Position numbers and translations under genes: made by a program. DNA of 64,000 bases from the NCBI RefSeq assembly GCF_001194135.2, contig NC_068985.1, positions 41,281,617 to 41,345,616 on the forward strand. Reading direction: 5' to 3'. The notes under the pieces are model-generated. The model was given only the letters and a program-made list of their open reading frames with translations, searched no databases and had not been told where the DNA came from. The first letter of the stretch is position 1. Each line of letters opens with the position of its first letter. Shown in pieces: positions 1,242 to 15,779 of the stretch. This DNA comes from Octopus bimaculoides. Lineage: Eukaryota.

Positions 1242-1674
1242 CATTATTTTTATTTCGCTTAAGTATAGCGATACTAATAAACTGGTGATAGAACCTAATA
1301 TACATATGGTTCAGAACAAGTTTTCAGTCGTATACAAAAATGACGAAGGAAAAGAAATTATATCATTAACTTCATCAGCTTACAGCCGTTTCTGCTGTAA
1401 CATGCAATGCACTAATAGTTGAATGCTTGTGTATCACCCTATAGCTTCATCGGATCTTCAAGCATGAAGTACAATATTATTTGAGAAAGCATTTCCATTT
1501 ACATATACTCATAGAAAAGCATTACCAACGAAAAAATTCATAGAAATATGTAGGAAATGAATTTAAGTGTTTGATGAGTAGAAGTATCACCCAGAAATGA
1601 AATAAGACGATATTTCATCTCTCTCTCTCTCTCTGAATATATATTTTTTTTTCTGGTGTTTATTCGGGTGTATA

Positions 1675-2481
1675 AGAGGGGGTACCCAAAAGTAACCGGA
1701 AACGTTCTTTGTGGGACAAGCCCATTGTAGTTCAGGCTTCCGCCACTAGAAGTTACTTGATGCAACCCTCAGGCATAAATTGTACAGCCATGTAGTGCGT
1801 CTTTGTTTTGTAGTGCTTCTCCCCTATTTGTCGATTTTTTCGATGGCTAAACGAAGGAACAGCGTGCTTCCGTGAAATTCTGTTTTCTGATGCGGAAAAC
1901 GGCAGCCGAAACAGTTGTCATGCTTCAAACAGTTTACAAGTACGCTGCCATGAGGAAAACACAAGTTTACTAGTGGTTTCCACGCTTTGTGAATGGTTAC
2001 TTATCGCTTGAAGACCAAGCTCGTCCAGGGCGACCCTCGACACCCCGCCCTCAACGAATGAAAATATGAAAATTCATAAACTGATCTTGCCAACAAATGA
2101 GTGAGGAATTGCGAATGTAAAGCGTTGCAGCAAAATTTGTGCCTCGTTTGCTCACGGAAGATCAAAAGCAGTCACGACTGAATGCGTGTCGTGAATAAAA
2201 AGAACAGTTGGAAGTTGATCTTACTCCCTGCAACTGTTTTTTTTTTTTTTTTTGAANNNNNNNNNNTAAACTGAGTGAAAAAGTCCTTAAACTGAGTGAA
2301 AAAGACCTTAACGGAAAACGTTGTGCAGATGTGGAAGAGGTGAAGAAGAAAAAAAGCGACGGAGACGTTAAAAAGCGTCACTCTTTGCAAGAGTTCCAGT
2401 ACTGCTTCGAATAGTGGAAAACGCTGGACCGATGCATAAAATGATATTGCAAAATTCCGGTTTCTTTTGGGTACCCGCTCG
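1675..2481 (+). mobile_element. Internally deleted mariner (Tc1/mariner) transposon with a decayed transposase
   Basis: TIRs AGAGGGGGTACCCAAAAGTAACCGGAA (1675-1701) and TTCCGGTTTCTTTTGGGTACCCGCTCG (2455-2481), with TA on both sides. Translation gives EQRASVKFCFLMRKTAAETVVMLQTVYKYAAMRKTQVY*WFPRFVNGYLSLEDQARPGRPST (mariner HTH N-terminus), then VAAKFVPRLLTEDQKQSRL, then a C-terminal KRCADVEEVK..QEFQYCFE*WK. The catalytic domain is missing. Confidence 0.92.
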
Positions 2482-3286: not shown

Positions 3287-3340
<54 letters not shown>

Positions 3341-3355
3341 GAACTCTTTGTCTTG

Positions 3356-3392
<37 letters not shown>

Positions 3393-4365
3393 AAACACAC
3401 AAATATATATATGTAAATATATAAATATGTTGTACATTGAGAGGGTCATATTGCCAACAAAATACATGTAATTGTGCTTCACTTATCATCATCATCATCG
3501 TCGTCGTCGTCAGTGAACTTGTGTAATTAGCTAATCCATTGTTTGACCAATTTTTAAATAAACCAATCAGCTCATTCGTCCGAGATATTTCGTCGCAGTT
3601 TGCAGTCTTATCGTTGAAATACAATCACCTGCTATTCTGTCACAAACTGTCACAAAATCACAGTTCCATGTGGTATTTGTTACTAAGGAGACAGAAGCAA
3701 GCCGAAACAGCGGTGTCTGACATTCCGCTAATGCCACTGGAGTGAGCGCTTTGTTTACACAGTTCACCTATCCGGAGAAGTAGTTCCCCGCAAATGAAAT
3801 TTAACGGTTAAAAGCTATATTCGCCTTCAAAATCTGCCAGAATTTGTTCCGAATGAAAATATACATCGTTGTTTAGATCCTCGCTCTTTTGTGAAGGATA
3901 ATATTTATATATTTAAAAAGAAAATTAAGTACGAATAAAAGTTTAGAAGACTCATAATGCAGTAAAATTGCGCATCAAACTCTTTGTTCAACCCTACATG
4001 AAAACTCATTTGTGCATATATGTATGTATGTTCCCGGCAGCACGTGTGTAACTATTCCTCGTCTTTCAACTCCAGTTTTTATTTTCTTCTCAGATTGTGT
4101 CCTCTTATTGAACACGTTTTACCGTCTTCTGGGGCTGTTTTCCAATTTATTGGCCTTTTTCCAATCTATTGGCCTTCATTAAGCCTGCTTCCAGAACAAG
4201 ATATATTCTGATACATGCTTCTAAACACCTCCTCCTGCCTCTCTTCTTAACTCCCTCATAGAACAACATTTCTCATAGCTTCTGACCACTCACCTCCTAT
4301 CCCAACCGTTTATTATTATTATTATTATTGATGGTATTGCTCTTGTTATTATTACTATTATCATT

Positions 4366-4575
4366 AAGGTGGTGAACTGGTAGAATCGTTAACACGCCGG
4401 CCAAAATGCATTTCGCCCGTCTTTATGATCCGCGTTCAAATGCCGCCGAGGTCAACTTTGCTTTCATCCTTTTGGGGTCGATAAATTAAGTACCAGTGAA
4501 ACACTCGGGTTGATGTAATCGACGAGTCTCCTCCTCCAAATTTCAGGCCTTATGCTTATTATGATTATTACTATT
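4366..4575 (+). mobile_element. SINE family C (GAGCTGGCAGAATCGTTAGCACGCC head, (ATT)n tail)
   Basis: Matches about 30 other copies in the window, with the conserved CGCCGAGGTCGACTTTGCCTTTCATCCTTTCGGGGTCGATAAA body. Confidence 0.85.
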
Positions 4576-4649
4576 ATTATTGTTTTGCACTTTTGGAATT
4601 ATTTTCAAATTATTGGAGTTCGTTGCTCTTCTCATAGTGACGTGTAACT

Positions 4650-5262
4650 GGCCGTGTGCAAAAATACACAAGCGGAATCTTTCGGAATCTGCCCATCTAC
4701 GATGGGAAATAAGGGGATAGTATCGCAAATCTATACCCTTTAAATTCACGAACTATACGCGGGGGGNNNNNNNNNNGGGGGGGGGAAGAATCTAGAATGA
4801 ATCCTTGTGACCGAAATTTTAACAACAAGAAAAATAAATATCAAAGGTGATCTATTAATACAAATCCACTAAGTAATATCCACTAAGTAATCATACTTTT
4901 TCACATTTTTTCCTGATTACTTCCTTCGTAATCCCGAAAAACATCGTGACCATTGCTCCAGCCGTTTGACAGTGAATAAGGAACAGACATTATAGTAAGA
5001 ATTTGATTTACTTCCCTTTGCTTCTTTTATTAGTTACCTTTCCCTTAATTTTTATTTACTCTATTTTTACGCCCGTAAACTGAAAAATTACCCTCAATAT
5101 CCACTGGATAATAATATTTTTTTTACATTTTTTTGCTAAAAAAACCTTCCTGATTACCTCCGTCGTAATCCCGAAAAACATCGTGATCATTGGTCCATCC
5201 GTTTGACTGTGAAGAGAGCACAGGCAGACAGACGGACATAACGCCCATTTTAGTAAGATACT
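4650..5262. mobile_element. Helentron/DINE-1-like non-autonomous repeat with an internal duplication
   Basis: 4911-4976 and 5148-5213 are near-identical (CCTGATTAC..CGTAATCCCGAAAAACATCGTGA..CCGTTTGAC). The element ends ACAGGCAGACAGACGGACA...CCCATTTTAGTAAGAT. The class assignment is by resemblance only. Confidence 0.4.
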
Positions 5263-5760
5263 ATTTATTTTATAAACTTTACTTCTTCCTATTTTATTCA
5301 TTTCATGTTTATTCTCTTTATATATGTGTTGTGTTGATGAAAAGTGAAGTAACTATGATATTCTTTGACCTGATGAGCAAACTTTTTTTTTACCTCTATT
5401 AATTTATAAATTATACAACGGTATTATATAATTTATATTATATACATTAATACAGACATGTAATTTGATTAATTTATTTATTATACACTAAAATAAATTG
5501 TCTTTATTTGCAAAGATCGTCGTTATATGGACGTCTCAAGATGGAATAAATTTATTCATCTTATACCACCTGTCTTTCTTTATATTTTATATGTGTGTGC
5601 GTGCGTGTGTACACACACGCACACACACATATATATATGCGCGCGCGCGCACGTTTAATGACACTTATTGTTTTCCTTTATGGAAACTCTGCGAACTGCA
5701 ATTTTTTTAATTATTTGTATAAACATTAGTAACGATTCGCTAAATCATCCATAAATTTTA

Positions 5761-5904
5761 TATGTGTTGGTAACGCGGCTGTCCAGGAACTGGCAAACAT
5801 GTGCCGACCCTTCTGACGATGCTTCGGCCTAAAGCTGAAACCGTACAGTCAAGAGATATCACAGTCGCCAATTTCCAGTCATCTACGGTCGCTGCCAGCA
5901 TGTA
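5761..5904 (+). ncRNA. Candidate type I hammerhead ribozyme at the apex of a long imperfect hairpin
   Basis: Core CTGACGA at 5813-5819; stem II GCTT/AAGC at 5821-24/5832-35; GAAA at 5837-40; stem III AC..GT at 5840-5849; GTC cleavage triplet at 5848-50; stem I CCCTT/AAGAG (4 of 5 pairs). Stem I extends outward through TGTG/CACA, TGGC/GCCA, GGAA/TTCC, GCGGCTGT/ACGGTCGC and TGTTGG/CCAGCA. Confidence 0.6.
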
Positions 5905-6053
5905 TGTGTAGAATTATATATGAGTTGACCGCAGCAACAGAACCCTTTAGCTCTTATTTATAGTGTAGTTGTTCTAACACCCTTAGTCATATTTAATGAC
6001 AATTATTGTTTTTCTTTCTGGTGAAACTCTGCTAACTAGATGCCTCATTTAAT

Positions 6054-6114
<61 letters not shown>

Positions 6115-7825
6115 CTTAAACAAGAATTAGTGATCGTCTACTTTGGCAATATTGATTACAAATAGTCTCAGATGAAGGCTTCTTTCCGATACATTTTCCA
6201 TTTCTTCAATATAAATCAAGTTGCTCCACTTTGAACTGTCTTTAGTGTTTTTCAGTTTCTCCACACTTGTTGACTTCAATGAATATATTCATTTCATCAT
6301 TAGACATTCATATAACGGCGATCGTCTCATATAAAAAAAAAACAATTTATTTTTGTGTATAATAAATAAATTATTTATTTATTTATTCGCACTTTAAATG
6401 TACCATTGAACACTTGAAAACATATATCTCAGTCAGATCAGCCTGTTGAAGATCACCCCCACTCTCCCTCTCTCTCTAACAGTTTTAATATTTTACTGGT
6501 TTCAACGGATATGCATAGGCTTCACCATCAACAGGATCTGTTTTGTGAACTTGCTTCTGCTGCTGTTGGACACCACTAGTGCTGGAAACAATGTATTCAA
6601 TTTCGTATAACAGGGATCCTGTCTATGCGTTTTATTGGGTTTAACTGAGCAATCTACAAACATGTGGTCTCTGTAGCGGAAAGGATAAAATTATGGACAC
6701 CATACCGTAACTCTATTCGCTGGCCTTGTATATTCTTTGTCTAGATAGAATCTCTTCCATGTTCACATTGGTACGTTTCCATGGACTTAGTAAGTAAGTA
6801 AGTAAGACGTAACGGCTTTTGTCAAGAATTGAAACTTACTCGCAATTTCGCATCGACAGAAGCATAACTTCATGCTCGATAACCCACTCATCCGCTCACT
6901 CAGTCTCCTCAATTAACAAAAGTGAAAAATTGGTTCGGCAAGACAGTTTAATGTTAAGGGATGAATTTCTTCAGCGGATGGGGGCTTGGGAATGGCGGTT
7001 CTGATTTAGGCTTCGTAATTTGATTGCAGGAAGGGGAAAAAATAACAGGACTAAACTGCAAAGTCTTATTGGTTTGAATTTGATAACTCTTGTCAGTGTT
7101 AGTTACTCATTTTCTTCCAAAGTATTAAGTAGAAAGAGAGAAGAAGAGAGAGGGCATGTGTTTGTGTGTATGCAGTGACTAGAAAGTGATATGGTGCAAG
7201 TCAGAGAAAGAAATGCTAACATAAATCAGACATACTGCCTCCTGTTAATGCATCAACTAAAAAAACAAATCCTTACTGTCAAAAAAGATTAAGGACTGTT
7301 TTTAGTATTAATCTTCGGTGTGTGCGTGGGGGGAGGGGGATGAACAAAGTAGTTGAAGCAGAATTTTGAACATGGCTCAGCTTCTTGAGATTAACTAAAG
7401 CCTCTAGAATCGGAAGGGCACTGGATTGCTCAGCTCGAATTTGTCTTTTTGCTAACCTGAAATGACGAGTCAACACATGTTCCTGCTAAGTCTATATACT
7501 GTTATATACTACTTTGTACTGTGCTATTATTATACTGCTTGTATTAATATTTCGAAAACTTTTGGTGGCAAGTTCTTCAAGGTATCGGGTTGTAGGCGCA
7601 CCACCAATAACCCCCAAACTTCAAAATCCGAAACCTCTATAACCCGCAGTTTTTACTTTCTTTTAGTGAGAGAAGCAACTCATACGGAAAATTCAAGAAA
7701 ATGGACCCCCAAGAAAAAAATATGTACAGCTGTTGCAAGCCATCAGCTGTTGTGCTTTGCGTCAACTATCCTGGTTGAGGCGAAAGCATGCTAACAATTC
7801 TGCCAGCTCACAGCCTGAATGGTTC

Positions 7826-8430
7826 CAGATTTTTGCACAAGGCCAGCAACTTTAGGGGAGATGGTAAATCGATTCCATCGATACCAGTGCTCAACTGATA
7901 CTTATTTTATCGACTCCGAACGGATGAAACGAAAATAACTCGGCGGTATTACAAGGTGGTATTTAAGAAACCGGAAGAAAATGCCGCTAAGTATTGCGTC
8001 CGACGCGCTAACGACTCTGCCGGCTCACCACCTCCATAATAATAATTGTTTCAAATGTTGGCACAAAGCCAACAATTTCAGATGGAAGAGACTTGTCGAT
8101 TTTGGTGGCAAGTTCTTTAAGGCATCGGGTTGTAGGCGCAACGCCAATAATCCACAAATTATGCACCATATATGAGCCAGTCGACCCAGTACTTAGCTGA
8201 TATTTATTTTATCGACCCAAAAATGATGAAAGGCAAAATCGAACTTGATGGAATTTGGTTGCTAGTTTGCAGCTTTTAATAGTAACAATAGCTTCCAATT
8301 TACTCACAAGGCCAGCACTTTCGAACGGAGGTTGTTAGTTGATAGCATCGAACCCAATTCTTGACCAATACTTTATTTCATGGACCCCGGAGGAATAATA
8401 GGAATAAGGTTGACTTCGACGAGATTTGAA
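7826..8430 (-). mobile_element. Cluster of two to three degenerate family C SINE copies
   Basis: GCACAAGGCC..AATTT tails, TACTTATTTTATCGAC bodies and a GCTAACGACTCTGCCGGCTC head, all in minus orientation. Confidence 0.7.
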
Positions 8431-12159: not shown

Positions 12160-12375
12160 AAGCGACGAGGCAGAATCATTAGCACGCCCGGCAAAATGCT
12201 TAGCAGCATTTCGTCCGTCCTTACATTCTGAGTTCAAATTCCGCGAGGTCATCTTTGCCTTCCAATCTTTCGGGGTCGATAAAATAAGTACCTGTTGATC
12301 AATGGGGTCGATGTAATCGACCTACCTGCCGCCATCCCCACAACTGCTGGCATTGTGCCAAAAATTTGAAATCAA
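12160..12375 (+). mobile_element. SINE family C
   Basis: GCAGAATCATTAGCACGCCCGGCAAAATGCTTAGC...CTTTCGGGGTCGATAAAATAAGTACC. Confidence 0.85.
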
Positions 12376-13505
12376 TATTTATAACTGTACACGCTTTGCA
12401 TCTTGTCTTTAAAAGTAATTTACTTCATATTTCTCGAAGCTTCAGAATTCTTATAATGTAAATGTCTTGCAATTCTCCCTGGTGTCGGGAGCATATCAGT
12501 CATTGCTGCTGAATTTGGAGGTTCATGCCCACCGGCCAGCATATGACTTGTTTTTCTTTTGTTTTATTTTTTTTTTTTTAATGTTTTATTATTATTATTA
12601 TTATTATTACCCAAGGAAATATTCTGCACGCTATTATGTCTGACTTTATCTTCTTCGAGTTCTACCAGTAAAAATATTCTATTTATATCTTTCGAAGTTT
12701 CTAAGTATTAATAATGTAAACGTACACACACACACACACACTCTCTCTCTCTCATGCGCTCTCTCTCTCTCATGCGCTCTCTCTCTCACGCACTCTCTCT
12801 CTCAGGCGTTCTCTCTCTCATGCGCTCTCTCTCTCTTTCTCTCTCTCTCACACACACTCACACACAAAGACACACACACATATGCATACATATGTGTGTG
12901 TGTGTGTGTGTGTATACGTGTGGATGTGTGGAACGTACATGTGTATACAACAATATATATAGGAATATATGTGGTGTGTGTGTGTGTATCTGCGGATAGG
13001 AAGAGAGGAGAAAGAGAGGGAAAGAAAGAGATACACACACACACACACAGAGGCAGATTGATAGAGAAAATCATGAAGATCAGCAACACATTAAAAGTGT
13101 CATATAACAGGAGGTAGGAAGAGTTTGTTAGTTTAAGATTAGGAATGGTGGCTGTTATTATTTATTAGACAGAATAGGTGGGCGTAATGTCTTTCTGAAC
13201 TATCATTTACACGGCGATGGCTATACTTAGTGGATGACGTTGGCATGCCATACGCTTTTAAACATAAACTTTTGTGTGTGTATGTGTGCGTGCATGTGCG
13301 GGCGCGCTCGTGTGTGTGCGTGTGCATTATATACATGTAGATATATATATATATATAGTGAAAAGGTACGATAATTTTTTTTCCATAGGGTAAATTGTAG
13401 TGAAAAATATACAAAGAAAGAAAATGAACAAAAATTTTAAATTTGACAATATATATATATATTTACACACATACACACACGCGTACATACTCACACACAT
13501 ATATA

Positions 13506-13540: not shown

Positions 13541-14860
13541 AAAAGTTAGTGCTAATCTTGCNNNNNNNNNNNNNNNNNNNNNNNNNNNNNNNNNNNNNNN
13601 NNNNNNNNNNNNNNNNNNNNNNNNNNNNNNNNNNNNNNNNNNNNNNNNNNNNNNNNNNNNNNNNNNNNNNNNNNNNNNNNNNNNNNNNNNNNNNNNNNNN
13701 NNNNNNNNNNNNNNNNNNNNNNNNNNNNNNNNNNNNNNNNNNNNNNNNNNNNNNNNNNNNNNNNNNNNNNNNNNNNNNNNNNNNNNNNNNNNNNNNNNNN
13801 NNNNNNNNNNNNNNNNNNNNNNNNNNNNNNNNNNNNNNNNNNNNNNNNNNNNNNNNNNNNNNNNNNNNNNNNNNNNNNNNNNNNNNNNNNNNNNNNNNNN
13901 NNNNNNNNNNNNNNNNNNNNNNNNNNNNNNNNNNNNNNNNNNNNNNNNNNNNNNNNNNNNNNNNNNNNNNNNNNNNNNNNNNNNNNNNNNNNNNNNNNNN
14001 NNNNNNNNNNNNNNNNNNNNNNNNNNNNNNNNNNNNNNNNNNNNNNNNNNNNNNNNNNNNNNNNNNNNNNNNNNNNNNNNNNNNNNNNNNNNNNNNNNNN
14101 NNNNNNNNNNNNNNNNNNNNNNNNNNNNNNNNNNNNNNNNNNNNNNNNNNNNNNNNNNNNNNNNNNNNNNNNNNNNNNNNNNNNNNNNNNNNNNNNNNNN
14201 NNNNNNNNNNNNNNNNNNNNNNNNNNNNNNNNNNNNNNNNNNNNNNNNNNNNNNNNNNNNNNNNNNNNNNNNNNNNNNNNNNNNNNNNNNNNNNNNNNNN
14301 NNNNNNNNNNNNNNNNNNNNNNNNNNNNNNNNNNNNNNNNNNATATATATATATATATATATAAAACTTTAACAAAAAAATGAATACACGAAACGAACAA
14401 TTCACGTAATTGCTTCCAGTTGCCAATGTACTAATGGCATACTTTCGACGATGAGATTGCACAACACTCTGATACTGCTGCTGCTACAACAACAAGAAAA
14501 AACAACAGAAACAACAAGAACAACAACTACTACTACTACTACTGAATGTATTGTTGATAACAACAAAAACATCAGCATCAACAACACAAAGTCTTCTTAT
14601 TCATATATTTAAATAATTATTGTCTTTATCTCCCACAAATGGGACTATAAAGGCAAGAGTACAAGGACGAATTACAAAAGTTTTGGGGATTAATGTAGAA
14701 TCGTGTGCGCGCGCGTGTGTATATTATTCTGTGTGTGTGTGTGTGTGTAATTGTGTGTATCAGTAAGTGTATGTATAAAGGGCCCGAAAATCTAAGCACA
14801 CAAAAGGCATGAAAAAAGAGGTTCCATATCGGTGACAAACAATTACGCTAATGAAAATAA

Positions 14861-15779
14861 CCCTTTCTACTATAAGCACAAGGCCTGAAATTTTGGTGGA
14901 GAGAGTAAGTCGATTACATCGACCCCAGTGCTCAACTGGTACTTATTTTATCGACCCCGAAAGGATGAAAAACATTTGCACTGAGAACGTGAATACAGCC
15001 ATGAATACAACTAAGCATTTCGCCCGGCGTGCTAACGATTTTGCCAGCTCGCCGCTTATGGTAATGAAAATAACAGAAGAAGTAACAACAACAATATTAT
15101 TTTCTATTATAAACACAAGATCTGAACATTTTCGTGGGAAGTGGGTAATTCGATAACATTGACCCCAGTGATCAATTGATACCAATTTTTTCGACCCCGA
15201 AAGGATGAAAGGTAAAGTCAACCTCGGCGAAATTTGAACTCAGAACGTAAAGACGGACGAAATGCCGCTAACGATTCTCTCAGCTCGTCGCCTTACTGAC
15301 TAATAATAATATTAATCCTTTCTACTATGGGCACAATGCTTGAAATTTTGGGGGATGGGGATAGTCGATTACATCGACCCCTGTACATGACTGGTACCTA
15401 TTTTATTGACCCCGAAAGGATGAAAGTCAAAGTCGACCTCGGCGGAATTTGAACTCAGATGGTAAAGACGGACGAAATGCCACTAAGCATTTTGCTCGGC
15501 GTGCTAACGAGTCTGACGGCTCGCCGCCTTATTGATTAATAATCATTAATAATGCTAATTCTTTCTAATAATGGTACAAGGCCAACAGTTTTAGAGGAGG
15601 AAGCTAATCGATTACATTGATTCCAATGTTTCACTGGTGTTATAGTCTATATCAATACCGAAAGAATGAATGGCAAATTTGATCTCGAAAGTATTTGAAC
15701 TCAGAATGTAAAGAGCTGGAAGAAATGCCGCTAAATATTTTGTCCAAAGCGCTAACAGTTGTGCTAGCTCGCCACTTTA
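14861..15779 (-). mobile_element. Head-to-tail array of four family C SINEs
   Basis: Units at about 14861-15058, 15100-15295, 15316-15531 and 15560-15779. On the plus strand each runs from a CTTTCTACTAT..GCACAAGGCC tail to a GCTAACGATT..CCAGCTCGCCGCCTTA head, with AAT-rich spacers between units. Confidence 0.85.

What the first reader, a model, noticed from the sequence alone, without database searches (positions are those of the whole stretch)
5761..5904. Hammerhead ribozyme core capping a 145-nt G.U-rich hairpin in a unique GC-rich island
Seen in the sequence: CTGACGA (5813-19), stem II GCTT/AAGC, GAAA (5837-40), stem III AC[CGTACA]GT (one change from the palindrome ACTGTACAGT), GTC (predicted cleavage after 5850) and stem I CCCTT/AAGAG. 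Stem I continues outward through five further helices, 5800-03/5860-63, 5791-94/5867-70, 5786-89/5873-76, 5775-82/5885-92 and 5761-72/5893-5904. Six non-Watson-Crick pairs are G.U on the + strand against one A.C. That asymmetry fits selection on an RNA of the same strand as the core better than a decayed DNA inverted repeat. Established: minimal hammerheads occur in Penelope-like elements, while long-armed hammerheads occur in retrozymes and as conserved intronic ribozymes. Inference: this is not a minimal Penelope motif. It may be an unannotated cephalopod retrozyme-like unit or a domesticated ribozyme. Caveat: U residues flank stem II at 5820 and 5836, so the usual G10.1-C11.1 junction is offset.
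Basis: partly seen in the sequence, partly recalled or inferred. Interest (0 to 1): 0.85.

Follow-up and report, generated by a model that had tools for sequence, protein, structure and literature searches.

The report
Decayed hammerhead-like retroelement relic
The hammerhead-ribozyme words and the long hairpin are really there, but they most likely mark a worn-out, inactive copy of a known kind of ribozyme-carrying mobile element, one of several in this window, and not a new or working ribozyme.

Summary
The architecture (CUGACGA-U-GCUU..AAGC-U-GAAAC-CGUACA-GUC at a hairpin tip) matches experimentally validated animal retrozyme hammerheads. These include the axolotl one, which has the same U.U flank on helix II.

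Support is moderate:
- A compact hammerhead descriptor is expected 0.0045 times per shuffled window.
- The flanking arms are in the best 1.25% of positions.
- The window holds two other hammerhead-derived motifs, at 42675-42719 (-) and 58597-58641 (+).

Against it:
- No Rfam hit.
- My own covariance model gives only 14.2 bits (E about 0.1).
- The hammerhead fold costs 15 kcal/mol more than the minimum-energy fold, against 3-7 for validated ribozymes.
- There is no second copy, no tandem partner, no homologue and no reverse transcriptase nearby.
- The G.U asymmetry and the "unique GC island" arguments do not hold statistically.

Verdict: probably (about 0.6) a decayed, inactive solitary copy of a retrozyme or Penelope-lineage element, bounded by 46-nt direct repeats 338 nt apart. 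Chance resemblance is about 0.27. An active or domesticated ribozyme is about 0.05. It is a known kind and of low to moderate interest.

The parts
5808..5812 (+). helix I, 5' strand (CCCUU)
   Evidence: Pairs with 5851-5855 (AAGAG): 4 of 5 pairs, with C5809.A5854 mismatched.
5813..5819 (+). catalytic box CUGACGA (C3-A9)
   Evidence: Read directly. One of only two full CUGANGA..GAAAY..RUH word sets in the window.
5820..5836 (+). helix II hairpin: U5820, GCUU 5821-24, loop CGGCCUA 5825-31, AAGC 5832-35, U5836
   Evidence: Four base pairs opening with G-C and flanked by a U.U mismatch. Validated axolotl Ax353 has the same arrangement.
5837..5840 (+). catalytic box GAAA (G12, A13, A14, A15.1)
   Evidence: Read directly.
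5840..5849 (+). helix III: A-U and C-G pairs with hexaloop CGUACA; ACCGUACAGU is one change from a 10-nt palindrome
   Evidence: Coral Amil224 has ACAGUACUGU in the same place. All four validated ribozymes and the two other motifs in this window have perfect palindromes here.
5850..5850 (+). C17; cleavage would fall between 5850 and 5851 if the motif were active
   Evidence: Position follows from the hammerhead numbering. Activity was not tested and is judged unlikely.
5851..5855 (+). helix I, 3' strand (AAGAG)
5761..5807 (+). outer 5' arm of the hairpin
   Evidence: Helices 5761-72, 5775-82, 5786-89, 5791-94 and 5800-03 pair with the 3' arm. The arms-only energy is in the lowest 1.25% of positions.
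5856..5904 (+). outer 3' arm of the hairpin
5654..5697 (+). direct repeat, copy 1
   Evidence: 87% identical over 46 aligned positions to 5992-6037, E 2e-9 to 2e-10. No other copy in the window.
5992..6037 (+). direct repeat, copy 2 (start-to-start spacing 338 nt)
   Evidence: No further similarity beyond it.
5585..5652 (.). compound (TG/CA/TA/GC)n microsatellite abutting repeat copy 1
6046..6114 (.). (TA)n microsatellite just after repeat copy 2
5470..5559 (.). left arm of an outer 95-nt inverted repeat that brackets the whole region
   Evidence: 80% complementary to 6279-6373, E 1e-19.
6279..6373 (.). right arm of the outer inverted repeat

Best explanation
The locus is most likely a decayed, solitary copy of a small non-coding retroelement that carried a type-I hammerhead ribozyme. 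That is the lineage of metazoan non-LTR retrozymes and of the terminal repeats of Penelope-like elements.

In a live element, the + strand RNA folds so that the hammerhead sits at the tip of a long imperfect hairpin. Because helix III is tiny and palindromic, two tandem copies pair to form the active dimer. Cleavage after C17 releases unit-length RNA, which is circularised and copied back into DNA by a Penelope-type reverse transcriptase and endonuclease, often at microsatellites and as more-than-unit copies.

Here only one unit remains, about 294-338 nt, marked by 46-nt direct repeats between two microsatellites. The motif keeps its catalytic words. It has a mismatch in helix I, a broken helix III palindrome, a U.U at the base of helix II and a strongly favoured competing fold. 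It is probably catalytically dead and has no present function.

Shown: the anatomy, the resemblance to validated ribozymes, the chance rates, and the presence of other hammerhead relics in the window. Inferred: the retroelement origin, the life cycle (taken from the cited papers) and the inactivity.
For: 1. The full catalytic centre CUGANGA/GAAAY/RUH is present with all three helices.
2. The layout matches validated retrozyme hammerheads. Ax353 has the same U-helix II-U arrangement, coral Amil224 has AC + GUAC-centred hexaloop + GU, and in all four the ribozyme caps a long hairpin.
3. Three traits that Cervera and de la Pena list as not imposed by their search are present: a nucleotide after A9, G10.1-C11.1, and palindromic 15.2-16.2.
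4. A compact descriptor finds only this site in the real window, none in the reversed decoy, and 0.0045 per shuffled window. The arms plus helix I occur together at 0.3% of positions.
5. The window has two other statistically solid hammerhead-derived motifs, so such elements are common in this genome. 42675-42719(-) scores 27 bits, E 1.8e-5, with my model and 21.9 bits with Rfam Hammerhead_1. 58597-58641(+) has a feature set seen in 0 of 3000 shuffles.
6. Direct repeats 338 nt apart, unit GC 0.39 and microsatellite flanks fit the published retrozyme size (150-450 bp), GC below 45-50%, long target duplications or partial tandems, and Penelope target bias.
7. Repeat divergence of about 13% predicts roughly three substitutions in a 50-nt motif. 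That fits the helix I mismatch plus one palindrome-breaking change.
Against: - No Rfam hammerhead family scores it, even at E <= 10 in a 73-nt search. This is weak evidence, because Rfam is also silent on 58597-58641.
- My model built from validated ribozymes gives 14.2 bits, E about 0.1. That is barely above visibly non-hammerhead hits at 12-12.8 bits.
- The catalytic words alone are expected 0.5-0.9 times per window.
- My descriptor thresholds were set after seeing the candidate.
- There is no other copy in the window, no tandem partner ribozyme and no second unit.
- There is no sequence similarity to the other hammerhead-like loci.
- No RT or GIY-YIG remnant lies on the + strand within about 2.4 kb either side.
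- No homologue was found in any reachable collection.
- Direct repeats of this spacing cover about 6% of the window.
- The extra U5836 before G12 is not part of the Penelope consensus.
Confidence: 0.6

Rival explanations
1. Chance resemblance. An ordinary imperfect hairpin in repeat-rich non-coding DNA happens to carry the short hammerhead words at its apex. The hairpin could be the remnant of an inverted duplication or of some other inserted element. No ribozyme ancestry or function is involved.
For: - The catalytic words are expected 0.5-0.9 times per window.
- A looser descriptor is expected 0.125 times per window and also hits obvious junk at 1278-1378.
- My covariance model gives E about 0.1, within the noise continuum.
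- Rfam is silent.
- Hairpins this stable occur at 1-5% of positions, and the strand asymmetry is ordinary.
- The arm alignment is not significant as DNA.
- The minimum-energy fold buries the core, and the hammerhead fold is 15.4 kcal/mol worse.
- It is a single copy with no homologues.
Against: - Requiring compact loops and all three helices drops the chance rate to 0.0045 per window. Adding the arms drops it to about 2e-4.
- Details not used to find the motif agree with validated ribozymes: the U..U flank, G-C as the first helix II pair, a GUAC-centred near-palindrome, and the position at a hairpin tip.
- Two other hammerhead-derived motifs in the same 56 kb raise the prior for a real copy.
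Confidence: 0.27
2. An active or domesticated long-armed type-I hammerhead, for example an intronic or regulatory self-cleaving RNA, or a live retrozyme unit. It would cleave the + strand transcript after C5850.
For: - The catalytic centre is intact.
- The U.U-flanked helix II is compatible with activity in axolotl Ax353, which self-cleaves 22% in one hour and more as a dimer.
- The + strand folds better than the - strand.
Against: - The hammerhead fold is 15.4 kcal/mol above the minimum-energy fold, against 3.1-7.4 for four active retrozyme ribozymes.
- Helix I has a C.A mismatch.
- Helix III is 2 bp with a broken palindrome, and there is no tandem partner for dimerisation.
- No recognisable loop 1 / loop 2 tertiary motif is present.
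- No conservation data are available.
- The strand asymmetry is not significant.
Confidence: 0.05
3. The 294-nt segment between the direct repeats is a retro-insertion of a - strand RNA, with an A-rich 3' end next to 5698 and a long target-site duplication. Alternatively the hairpin is a decayed MITE or inverted repeat. In either case the + strand hammerhead words are antisense or incidental.
For: - On the - strand the segment ends ...ACAAATAATTAAAAAAATTGC, directly before the repeat copy.
- A 47-aa ORF spans the hairpin on the - strand.
- The locus sits inside a 95-nt inverted repeat pair, so inverted duplications occur here.
Against: - The A-rich run is short and the flanks are AT-rich anyway.
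- There is no tRNA or pol III box and no Rfam family.
- The ORF has no homologue and no credible domain.
- The hairpin base (5761/5904) does not coincide with the ends of the repeat-bounded unit, and the arms are not significant as a DNA inverted repeat.
- The - strand fold is unremarkable, z -0.64.
Confidence: 0.06

Closest known systems
Metazoan non-LTR retrozymes (Cervera and de la Pena, NAR 2020, PMC7229834), especially axolotl Rtz353/HHR_Amex2 and coral Amil224
   Same: - Type-I hammerhead at the tip of a long imperfect hairpin.
- Helix III of 2 bp with a (near-)palindromic loop.
- U.U at the base of helix II, as in HHR_Amex2.
- Unit of about 340 nt, low GC (0.39), and circular-fold z within the validated range.
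   Different: - No tandem array or second ribozyme, and only a 46-nt repeat.
- Helix I is mismatched and the palindrome is broken.
- The hammerhead fold is much less accessible (15.4 against 3.1-7.4 kcal/mol).
- No family, and no evidence of expression or a circular RNA.
Minimal hammerheads of Penelope-like elements (Cervera and de la Pena, MBE 2014, PMC4209133)
   Same: - An extra nucleotide between A9 and 10.1.
- A G10.1-C11.1 pair.
- A short helix I (4-5 bp).
- Palindromic 15.2-16.2.
- Usually found as dispersed single, truncated copies.
- Penelope elements prefer to insert at microsatellites.
   Different: - Helix II is 4 bp, not 6-8 bp.
- There is an extra U before G12.
- The long hairpin arms are not a described Penelope trait.
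- No RT/GIY-YIG ORF or second terminal repeat lies nearby.
Rfam Hammerhead_1 (RF00163)
   Same: Core boxes and type-I topology.
   Different: The candidate scores below roughly 9 bits (not listed at E <= 10 in 73 nt). The relic at 42679-42715(-) scores 21.9 bits against a gathering score of 34.
Conserved intronic hammerheads of amniotes
   Same: Single-copy genomic setting with extended helices.
   Different: Those are defined by deep sequence conservation and efficient monomeric folds. Neither can be shown here, and the fold test argues against it. The Rfam HH9/HH10 models do not match.
MITE or foldback hairpins
   Same: An imperfect long hairpin in AT-rich, repeat-rich DNA. A true 95-nt inverted repeat pair brackets the locus.
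   Different: The hairpin arms are not significant as a DNA inverted repeat (P = 0.07). No copies were seen, and the ends do not match the direct-repeat boundaries.

Membership tests
Hammerhead ribozyme, type I | Conserved catalytic centre CUGANGA ... GAAA ... UH in the right order and spacing | tested here: met
   Located at 5813-19, 5837-40 and 5849-50. The words alone are expected 0.5-0.9 times per window by chance.
Hammerhead ribozyme, type I | Three helices meeting the core, with G10.1-C11.1 directly adjoining A9 and G12 | tested here: inconclusive
   Helices I (4 of 5 pairs), II (4 bp) and III (2 bp) exist. U5820 and U5836 separate the G-C pair from the core. Active axolotl Ax353 has the same feature.
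Hammerhead ribozyme, type I | Significant score against curated or validated covariance models | tested here: not met
   No Rfam hammerhead hit at gathering or at E <= 10. My own model gives 14.2 bits, E about 0.1.
Hammerhead ribozyme, type I | Hammerhead fold energetically accessible | tested here: not met
   It is +15.4 kcal/mol above the minimum-energy fold, against +3.1 to +7.4 for four validated ribozymes in the same-size context.
Hammerhead ribozyme, type I | Site-specific self-cleavage in Mg2+ | not testable with these tools
   Needs in vitro transcription of 5755-5910 and of a dimeric construct.
Metazoan non-LTR retrozyme | Tandem repeats (two or more units of 150-450 bp), each with a type-I hammerhead | tested here: not met
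   One motif only. The repeat is limited to 46 nt at 338-nt spacing, and no similarity continues after the (TA)n tract.
Metazoan non-LTR retrozyme | Low GC (below 45-50%) and a unit size of a few hundred nt | tested here: met
   Unit 5654-5991 is 338 nt with GC 0.39. Criteria are from PMC7229834.
Metazoan non-LTR retrozyme | Hammerhead caps a long self-paired arm of the unit RNA | tested here: met
   Arms 5761-5807/5856-5904. The same is seen in all four validated retrozymes. The whole-unit circular z of -1.46 is within the validated range of -0.97 to -3.38.
Metazoan non-LTR retrozyme | Multi-copy family in the genome, expressed as circular RNA | not testable with these tools
   No other copy in the 64-kb window. 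No cephalopod genome or RNA-seq data is reachable. Searches of other collections gave only unrelated bacterial genes.
Penelope-like element hammerhead | Located in a terminal repeat flanking an RT-GIY-YIG ORF (or a truncated copy of one) | tested here: not met
   No RT or GIY-YIG match in the three + strand frames of 3301-8200. Most published motifs are truncated solo copies, so this does not exclude the lineage.
Penelope-like element hammerhead | Nucleotide between A9 and 10.1, G10.1-C11.1, palindromic 15.2-16.2 and loop 3 | tested here: inconclusive
   The first two are met and 15.2-16.2 is C-G. Loop 3, CGUACA, is one change short of a palindrome. An extra U5836 is non-consensus.
MITE / TIR hairpin | Significant terminal inverted repeats with target duplication and multiple copies | tested here: not met
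   The arm alignment gives P = 0.07 against shuffles. There is no blastn self-hit between the arms and no other copy.

The most novel reading that the evidence does not exclude
The motif is a live, single-copy, long-armed type-I hammerhead with a U.U-flanked helix II. It would be conserved across cephalopods and used by the host, for example for co-transcriptional cleavage of an intron or non-coding transcript. That would make it an invertebrate counterpart of the amniote intronic hammerheads.
Probability: 0.04. Interest if true: 0.7.

Novelty: new member of a known kind. Interest (0 to 1): 0.3.

Why it matters
If the relic reading is right, this window alone carries three or four hammerhead-derived motifs. 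None of them reaches an Rfam gathering score. That would mean this genome holds a sizeable unannotated population of retrozyme or Penelope-type elements.

This is useful for repeat annotation and for asking whether cephalopods express ribozyme-derived circular RNAs. It extends a known phenomenon and does not reveal a new one. It is also a practical warning: Rfam's hammerhead models miss variants with unpaired nucleotides flanking helix II. The locus itself is probably inert.

Tried and rejected
- Rfam at gathering and at E <= 10 on the window, on the locus and on a 73-nt core: no hammerhead.
- tRNA scan: none.
- Coding exon on the - strand (47-aa ORF): only a sub-threshold Pfam hit (Mito_fiss_reg, E 0.018, 15.7 bits against a cut-off of 26.3), no homologue in 5.8 billion proteins, and no record of the ORF or of two neighbouring ORFs in public assemblies.
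- Exact-pattern scans of metagenome, GTDB and viral collections: four hits, all unrelated bacterial coding sequence.
- Literature search for the sequence strings: none.
- Supplements with cephalopod Penelope consensus sequences: not held.
- A second tandem unit after the (TA)n tract: not significant.
- Homology between this locus and the other hammerhead-like loci: none.
- "The whole unit is poorly structured" as an argument against a retrozyme: dropped, because validated retrozymes have similar z-scores.
- G.U asymmetry as evidence of selection: rejected as mostly ascertainment.
- The loose-descriptor hit at 1278-1378(-): junk with 40-nt loops and no Rfam hammerhead.
- One script timed out and one was lost. 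Both were repeated.

Full report
OBSERVATION

- CTGACGA lies at 5813-19.
- U5820 is followed by GCTT/AAGC (5821-24/5832-35) around a 7-nt loop, then U5836.
- GAAA lies at 5837-40.
- A-U and C-G pairs enclose CGTACA (5840-49), followed by C5850.
- CCCTT/AAGAG (5808-12/5851-55) has one C.A mismatch.
- The five outer helices are present. Of the 37 listed pairs, 30 are Watson-Crick, 6 are G.U and 1 is C.A.

The window itself is a gap-rich (7769 N) and microsatellite-rich eukaryotic draft. It has no tRNA and no Rfam family at gathering score. I could not verify the cephalopod origin.

IS THE HAIRPIN SPECIAL?

- 5755-5910 folds at -50.7 kcal/mol on the + strand (z -3.27) and -42.4 on the - strand (z -0.64).
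- In a scan of the whole window, 22 of 422 non-repetitive positions reach z <= -3.27 on some strand.
- 37% of positions show a strand difference of at least 8.3 kcal/mol, and 8% show as large a z difference.
- The arms alone, joined by a tetraloop, give -38.4 kcal/mol, which is the lowest 1.25% of positions.
- An unbiased DNA alignment of the arms gives 6 G.U-type and 7 A.C-type mismatches and is not significant (P = 0.07).

The hairpin is therefore good but not unique, and the G.U argument is mostly a product of how the helices were picked. The "GC island" is local: 0.51 in the hairpin against 0.23-0.28 in the flanks, with a window mean of 0.37.

IS THE HAMMERHEAD MORE THAN CHANCE?

Against:
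- No Rfam hammerhead model lists it, even at E <= 10 in a 73-nt search. In a search of that size, scores of about 9 bits do appear.
- The minimum-energy fold pairs UGAC 5814-17 with GUCA 5848-51.
- Forcing the hammerhead costs 15.4 kcal/mol.

For:
- The catalytic words with natural spacing occur twice in the window, at 5813 and 58602, against 0.5-0.9 expected.
- A loose descriptor is expected 0.125 times per shuffled window.
- A compact descriptor requires helix II of at least 4 bp with 0/1-nt offsets, helix III of at least 2 bp with a loop of at most 8 nt, and helix I of at least 4 of 5 pairs. It is expected 0.0045 times per shuffled window. It hits only this site in the real window and none in the reversed decoy.
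- Arms this good together with an acceptable helix I occur at 0.3% of positions. That puts the joint chance rate near 2e-4 per window.

These thresholds were set after seeing the candidate, so the true rate is higher.

COMPARISON WITH VALIDATED RIBOZYMES

Supplementary Table 2 of PMC7229834 gives four retrozymes that self-cleave in vitro:
- coral: CUGAUGA-GGCC-AGAAA-GGCC-GAAAC-AGUACU-GUC
- mussel: ...GUCU-UUUGU-AGAC-GAAAC-GCGC-GUC
- axolotl Ax353: CUGAUGA-U-GCC-CACUA-GGC-U-GAAAC-ACGU-GUA
- axolotl Ax330

The candidate, CUGACGA-U-GCUU-CGGCCUA-AAGC-U-GAAAC-CGUACA-GUC, shares the U..U flank of Ax353. The paper describes that flank as a U.U mismatch at the base of helix II, with 22% self-cleavage per hour and more as dimers. 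The candidate also shares the 2-bp helix III with a GUAC-centred hexaloop seen in the coral.

Cervera and de la Pena (PMC4209133) list features that emerged beyond their descriptor: a nucleotide between A9 and 10.1, G10.1-C11.1, and palindromic 15.2-16.2 and loop 3. The candidate has the first two and is one change short of the third.

In all four validated retrozymes the ribozyme caps a long imperfect hairpin. There the hammerhead fold costs only 3.1-7.4 kcal/mol over the minimum-energy fold, so the candidate is clearly worse on that measure.

A covariance model built from the four ribozymes scores the candidate 14.2 bits, E about 0.1. It ranks second in the window, only just above non-hammerhead noise at 12-12.8 bits.

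OTHER HAMMERHEAD-LIKE MOTIFS IN THE WINDOW

- The top hit of that model is 42675-42719 (-). Its sequence is ACUGUAC-CGAUGA-GAUAU-AAAU-AUAUC-GAAAC-GCGC-GUU. It scores 27 bits, E 1.8e-5, and Rfam Hammerhead_1 gives 21.9 bits. It has U4 changed to C and is followed by an A-rich tail.
- 58597-58641 (+) reads ACAGU-CUGAUGA-CA-GCU-UAGCU-GGC-C-GAAAC-UUCGAA-GUC-ACUGU. It has intact boxes, a perfect 5-bp helix I and a perfect 10-nt palindrome. That combination was seen in 0 of 3000 shuffled windows. Rfam does not list it either, so Rfam's silence on the candidate carries little weight.
- 1887-1919 (+) is a weaker partial match.

These loci share no sequence outside the core. Their presence shows that hammerhead-bearing elements have been active in this genome. 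That raises the prior that the candidate is a real, decayed copy. For scale, the giant squid genome paper reports 235 Rfam Hammerhead_1 hits (PMC6962438).

CONTEXT

- The motif lies in a segment bounded by direct repeats 5654-5697 and 5992-6037: 87% identity over 46 aligned positions, E about 1e-10, spacing 338 nt, and no other copy in the window.
- Microsatellites lie on both outer sides. The whole region is nested between 95-nt inverted repeats at 5470-5559 and 6279-6373.
- The unit is 338 nt with GC 0.39. This fits the published retrozyme range and the microsatellite target bias and partial-tandem insertions of Penelope-like elements.
- Direct repeats at 100-600-nt spacing cover about 6% of the window.
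- Nothing after the (TA)n tract resembles a second unit.
- No RT or GIY-YIG remnant lies on the + strand in 3301-8200.
- The unit folded as a circle has z -1.46, inside the validated range of -0.97 to -3.38.

HOMOLOGUES

None could be reached.
- The - strand 47-aa ORF has no relatives and only a sub-threshold Pfam match.
- Neighbouring ORFs are not on record.
- Pattern scans of metagenome, GTDB and viral collections returned only unrelated bacterial genes.
- The sequence strings appear in no paper.

VERDICT

- Most likely (about 0.6): a decayed, solitary, catalytically dead copy of a hammerhead-bearing non-autonomous retroelement of the retrozyme/Penelope lineage.
- About 0.27: chance resemblance in an ordinary hairpin.
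- About 0.05: an active or domesticated ribozyme.
- About 0.06: a - strand retro-insert or MITE with incidental words.

The asymmetry, uniqueness and domestication arguments are not supported. The thing is a new member of a known kind, and a genome-wide copy search would settle it quickly.

Noticed in passing
window 42675-42719, - strand (tail to about 42620): The best hammerhead-like motif in the window: ACUGUAC-CGAUGA-GAUAU-AAAU-AUAUC-GAAAC-GCGC-GUU, with U4 changed to C. My model gives 27 bits (E 1.8e-5) and Rfam Hammerhead_1 gives 21.9 bits (gathering 34). Helix III has the same form as the mussel retrozyme. A (GAAA/CAAA)n-like A-rich tail follows. It is probably a decayed retroelement 3' end.
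   Followed up: partly
window 58597-58641, + strand: Hammerhead-like motif directly 3' of a (CATA)n(TG)n microsatellite. It has intact boxes, a perfect 5-bp helix I, a perfect 10-nt palindrome ACUUCGAAGU, and a 3-bp helix II flanked by unpaired nucleotides, as in axolotl Ax353. This feature set was seen in 0 of 3000 shuffles. Rfam misses it, and an assembly gap begins about 100 nt downstream.
   Followed up: partly
window 1887-1919, + strand: Partial hammerhead-like match: CUGAUGc-GG..CC-GAAAC-AGUU-GUC, with A9 changed to C and no helix I. My model gives 10.2 bits. It may be another relic or noise.
   Followed up: no
window 5470-5559 and 6279-6373: A genuine 95-nt AT-rich inverted repeat pair (80% complementary, E 1e-19). 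It brackets the finding, both microsatellites and about 720 nt in between. It could be a foldback or MITE-like element, or an inverted duplication.
   Followed up: partly
window 4910-4989 and 5147-5226: An 80-nt direct repeat (86% identity, spacing 237 nt) only about 430 nt upstream of the finding. Local duplications are common here. Other pairs lie at 7560/8100, 7884/8186, 14849/15304, 26398/26683, 40638/40974, 40776/41204 and 62021/62169.
   Followed up: no
window 24571-24804; also 36661-36816(-), 42745-42900(-), 60529-60684(-), 52027-52182(+), 55303-55458(+): Non-repetitive 156-nt stretches that fold far better than the finding (z -6 to -7.8). At 24571 this holds on both strands, which suggests a true inverted repeat. 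Not examined further.
   Followed up: no
window-wide, e.g. 12288-12458, 14763-14942, 31168-31383, 41866-42045, 54139-54324, 62000-62137: Recurrent short ORF fragments with similar peptides (VPV[DE][QH]WGRCNR....TGV[DE][VL]ID[LR][PT]P[SP]P[KS][IF]..). They point to many copies of one interspersed repeat, probably a SINE-like family.
   Followed up: no
window 1278-1378, - strand: A loose hammerhead descriptor also hits CTGATGA ... GAAA here, but with loops of about 40 nt and no Rfam hammerhead score. It is a useful example of a chance hit.
   Followed up: yes
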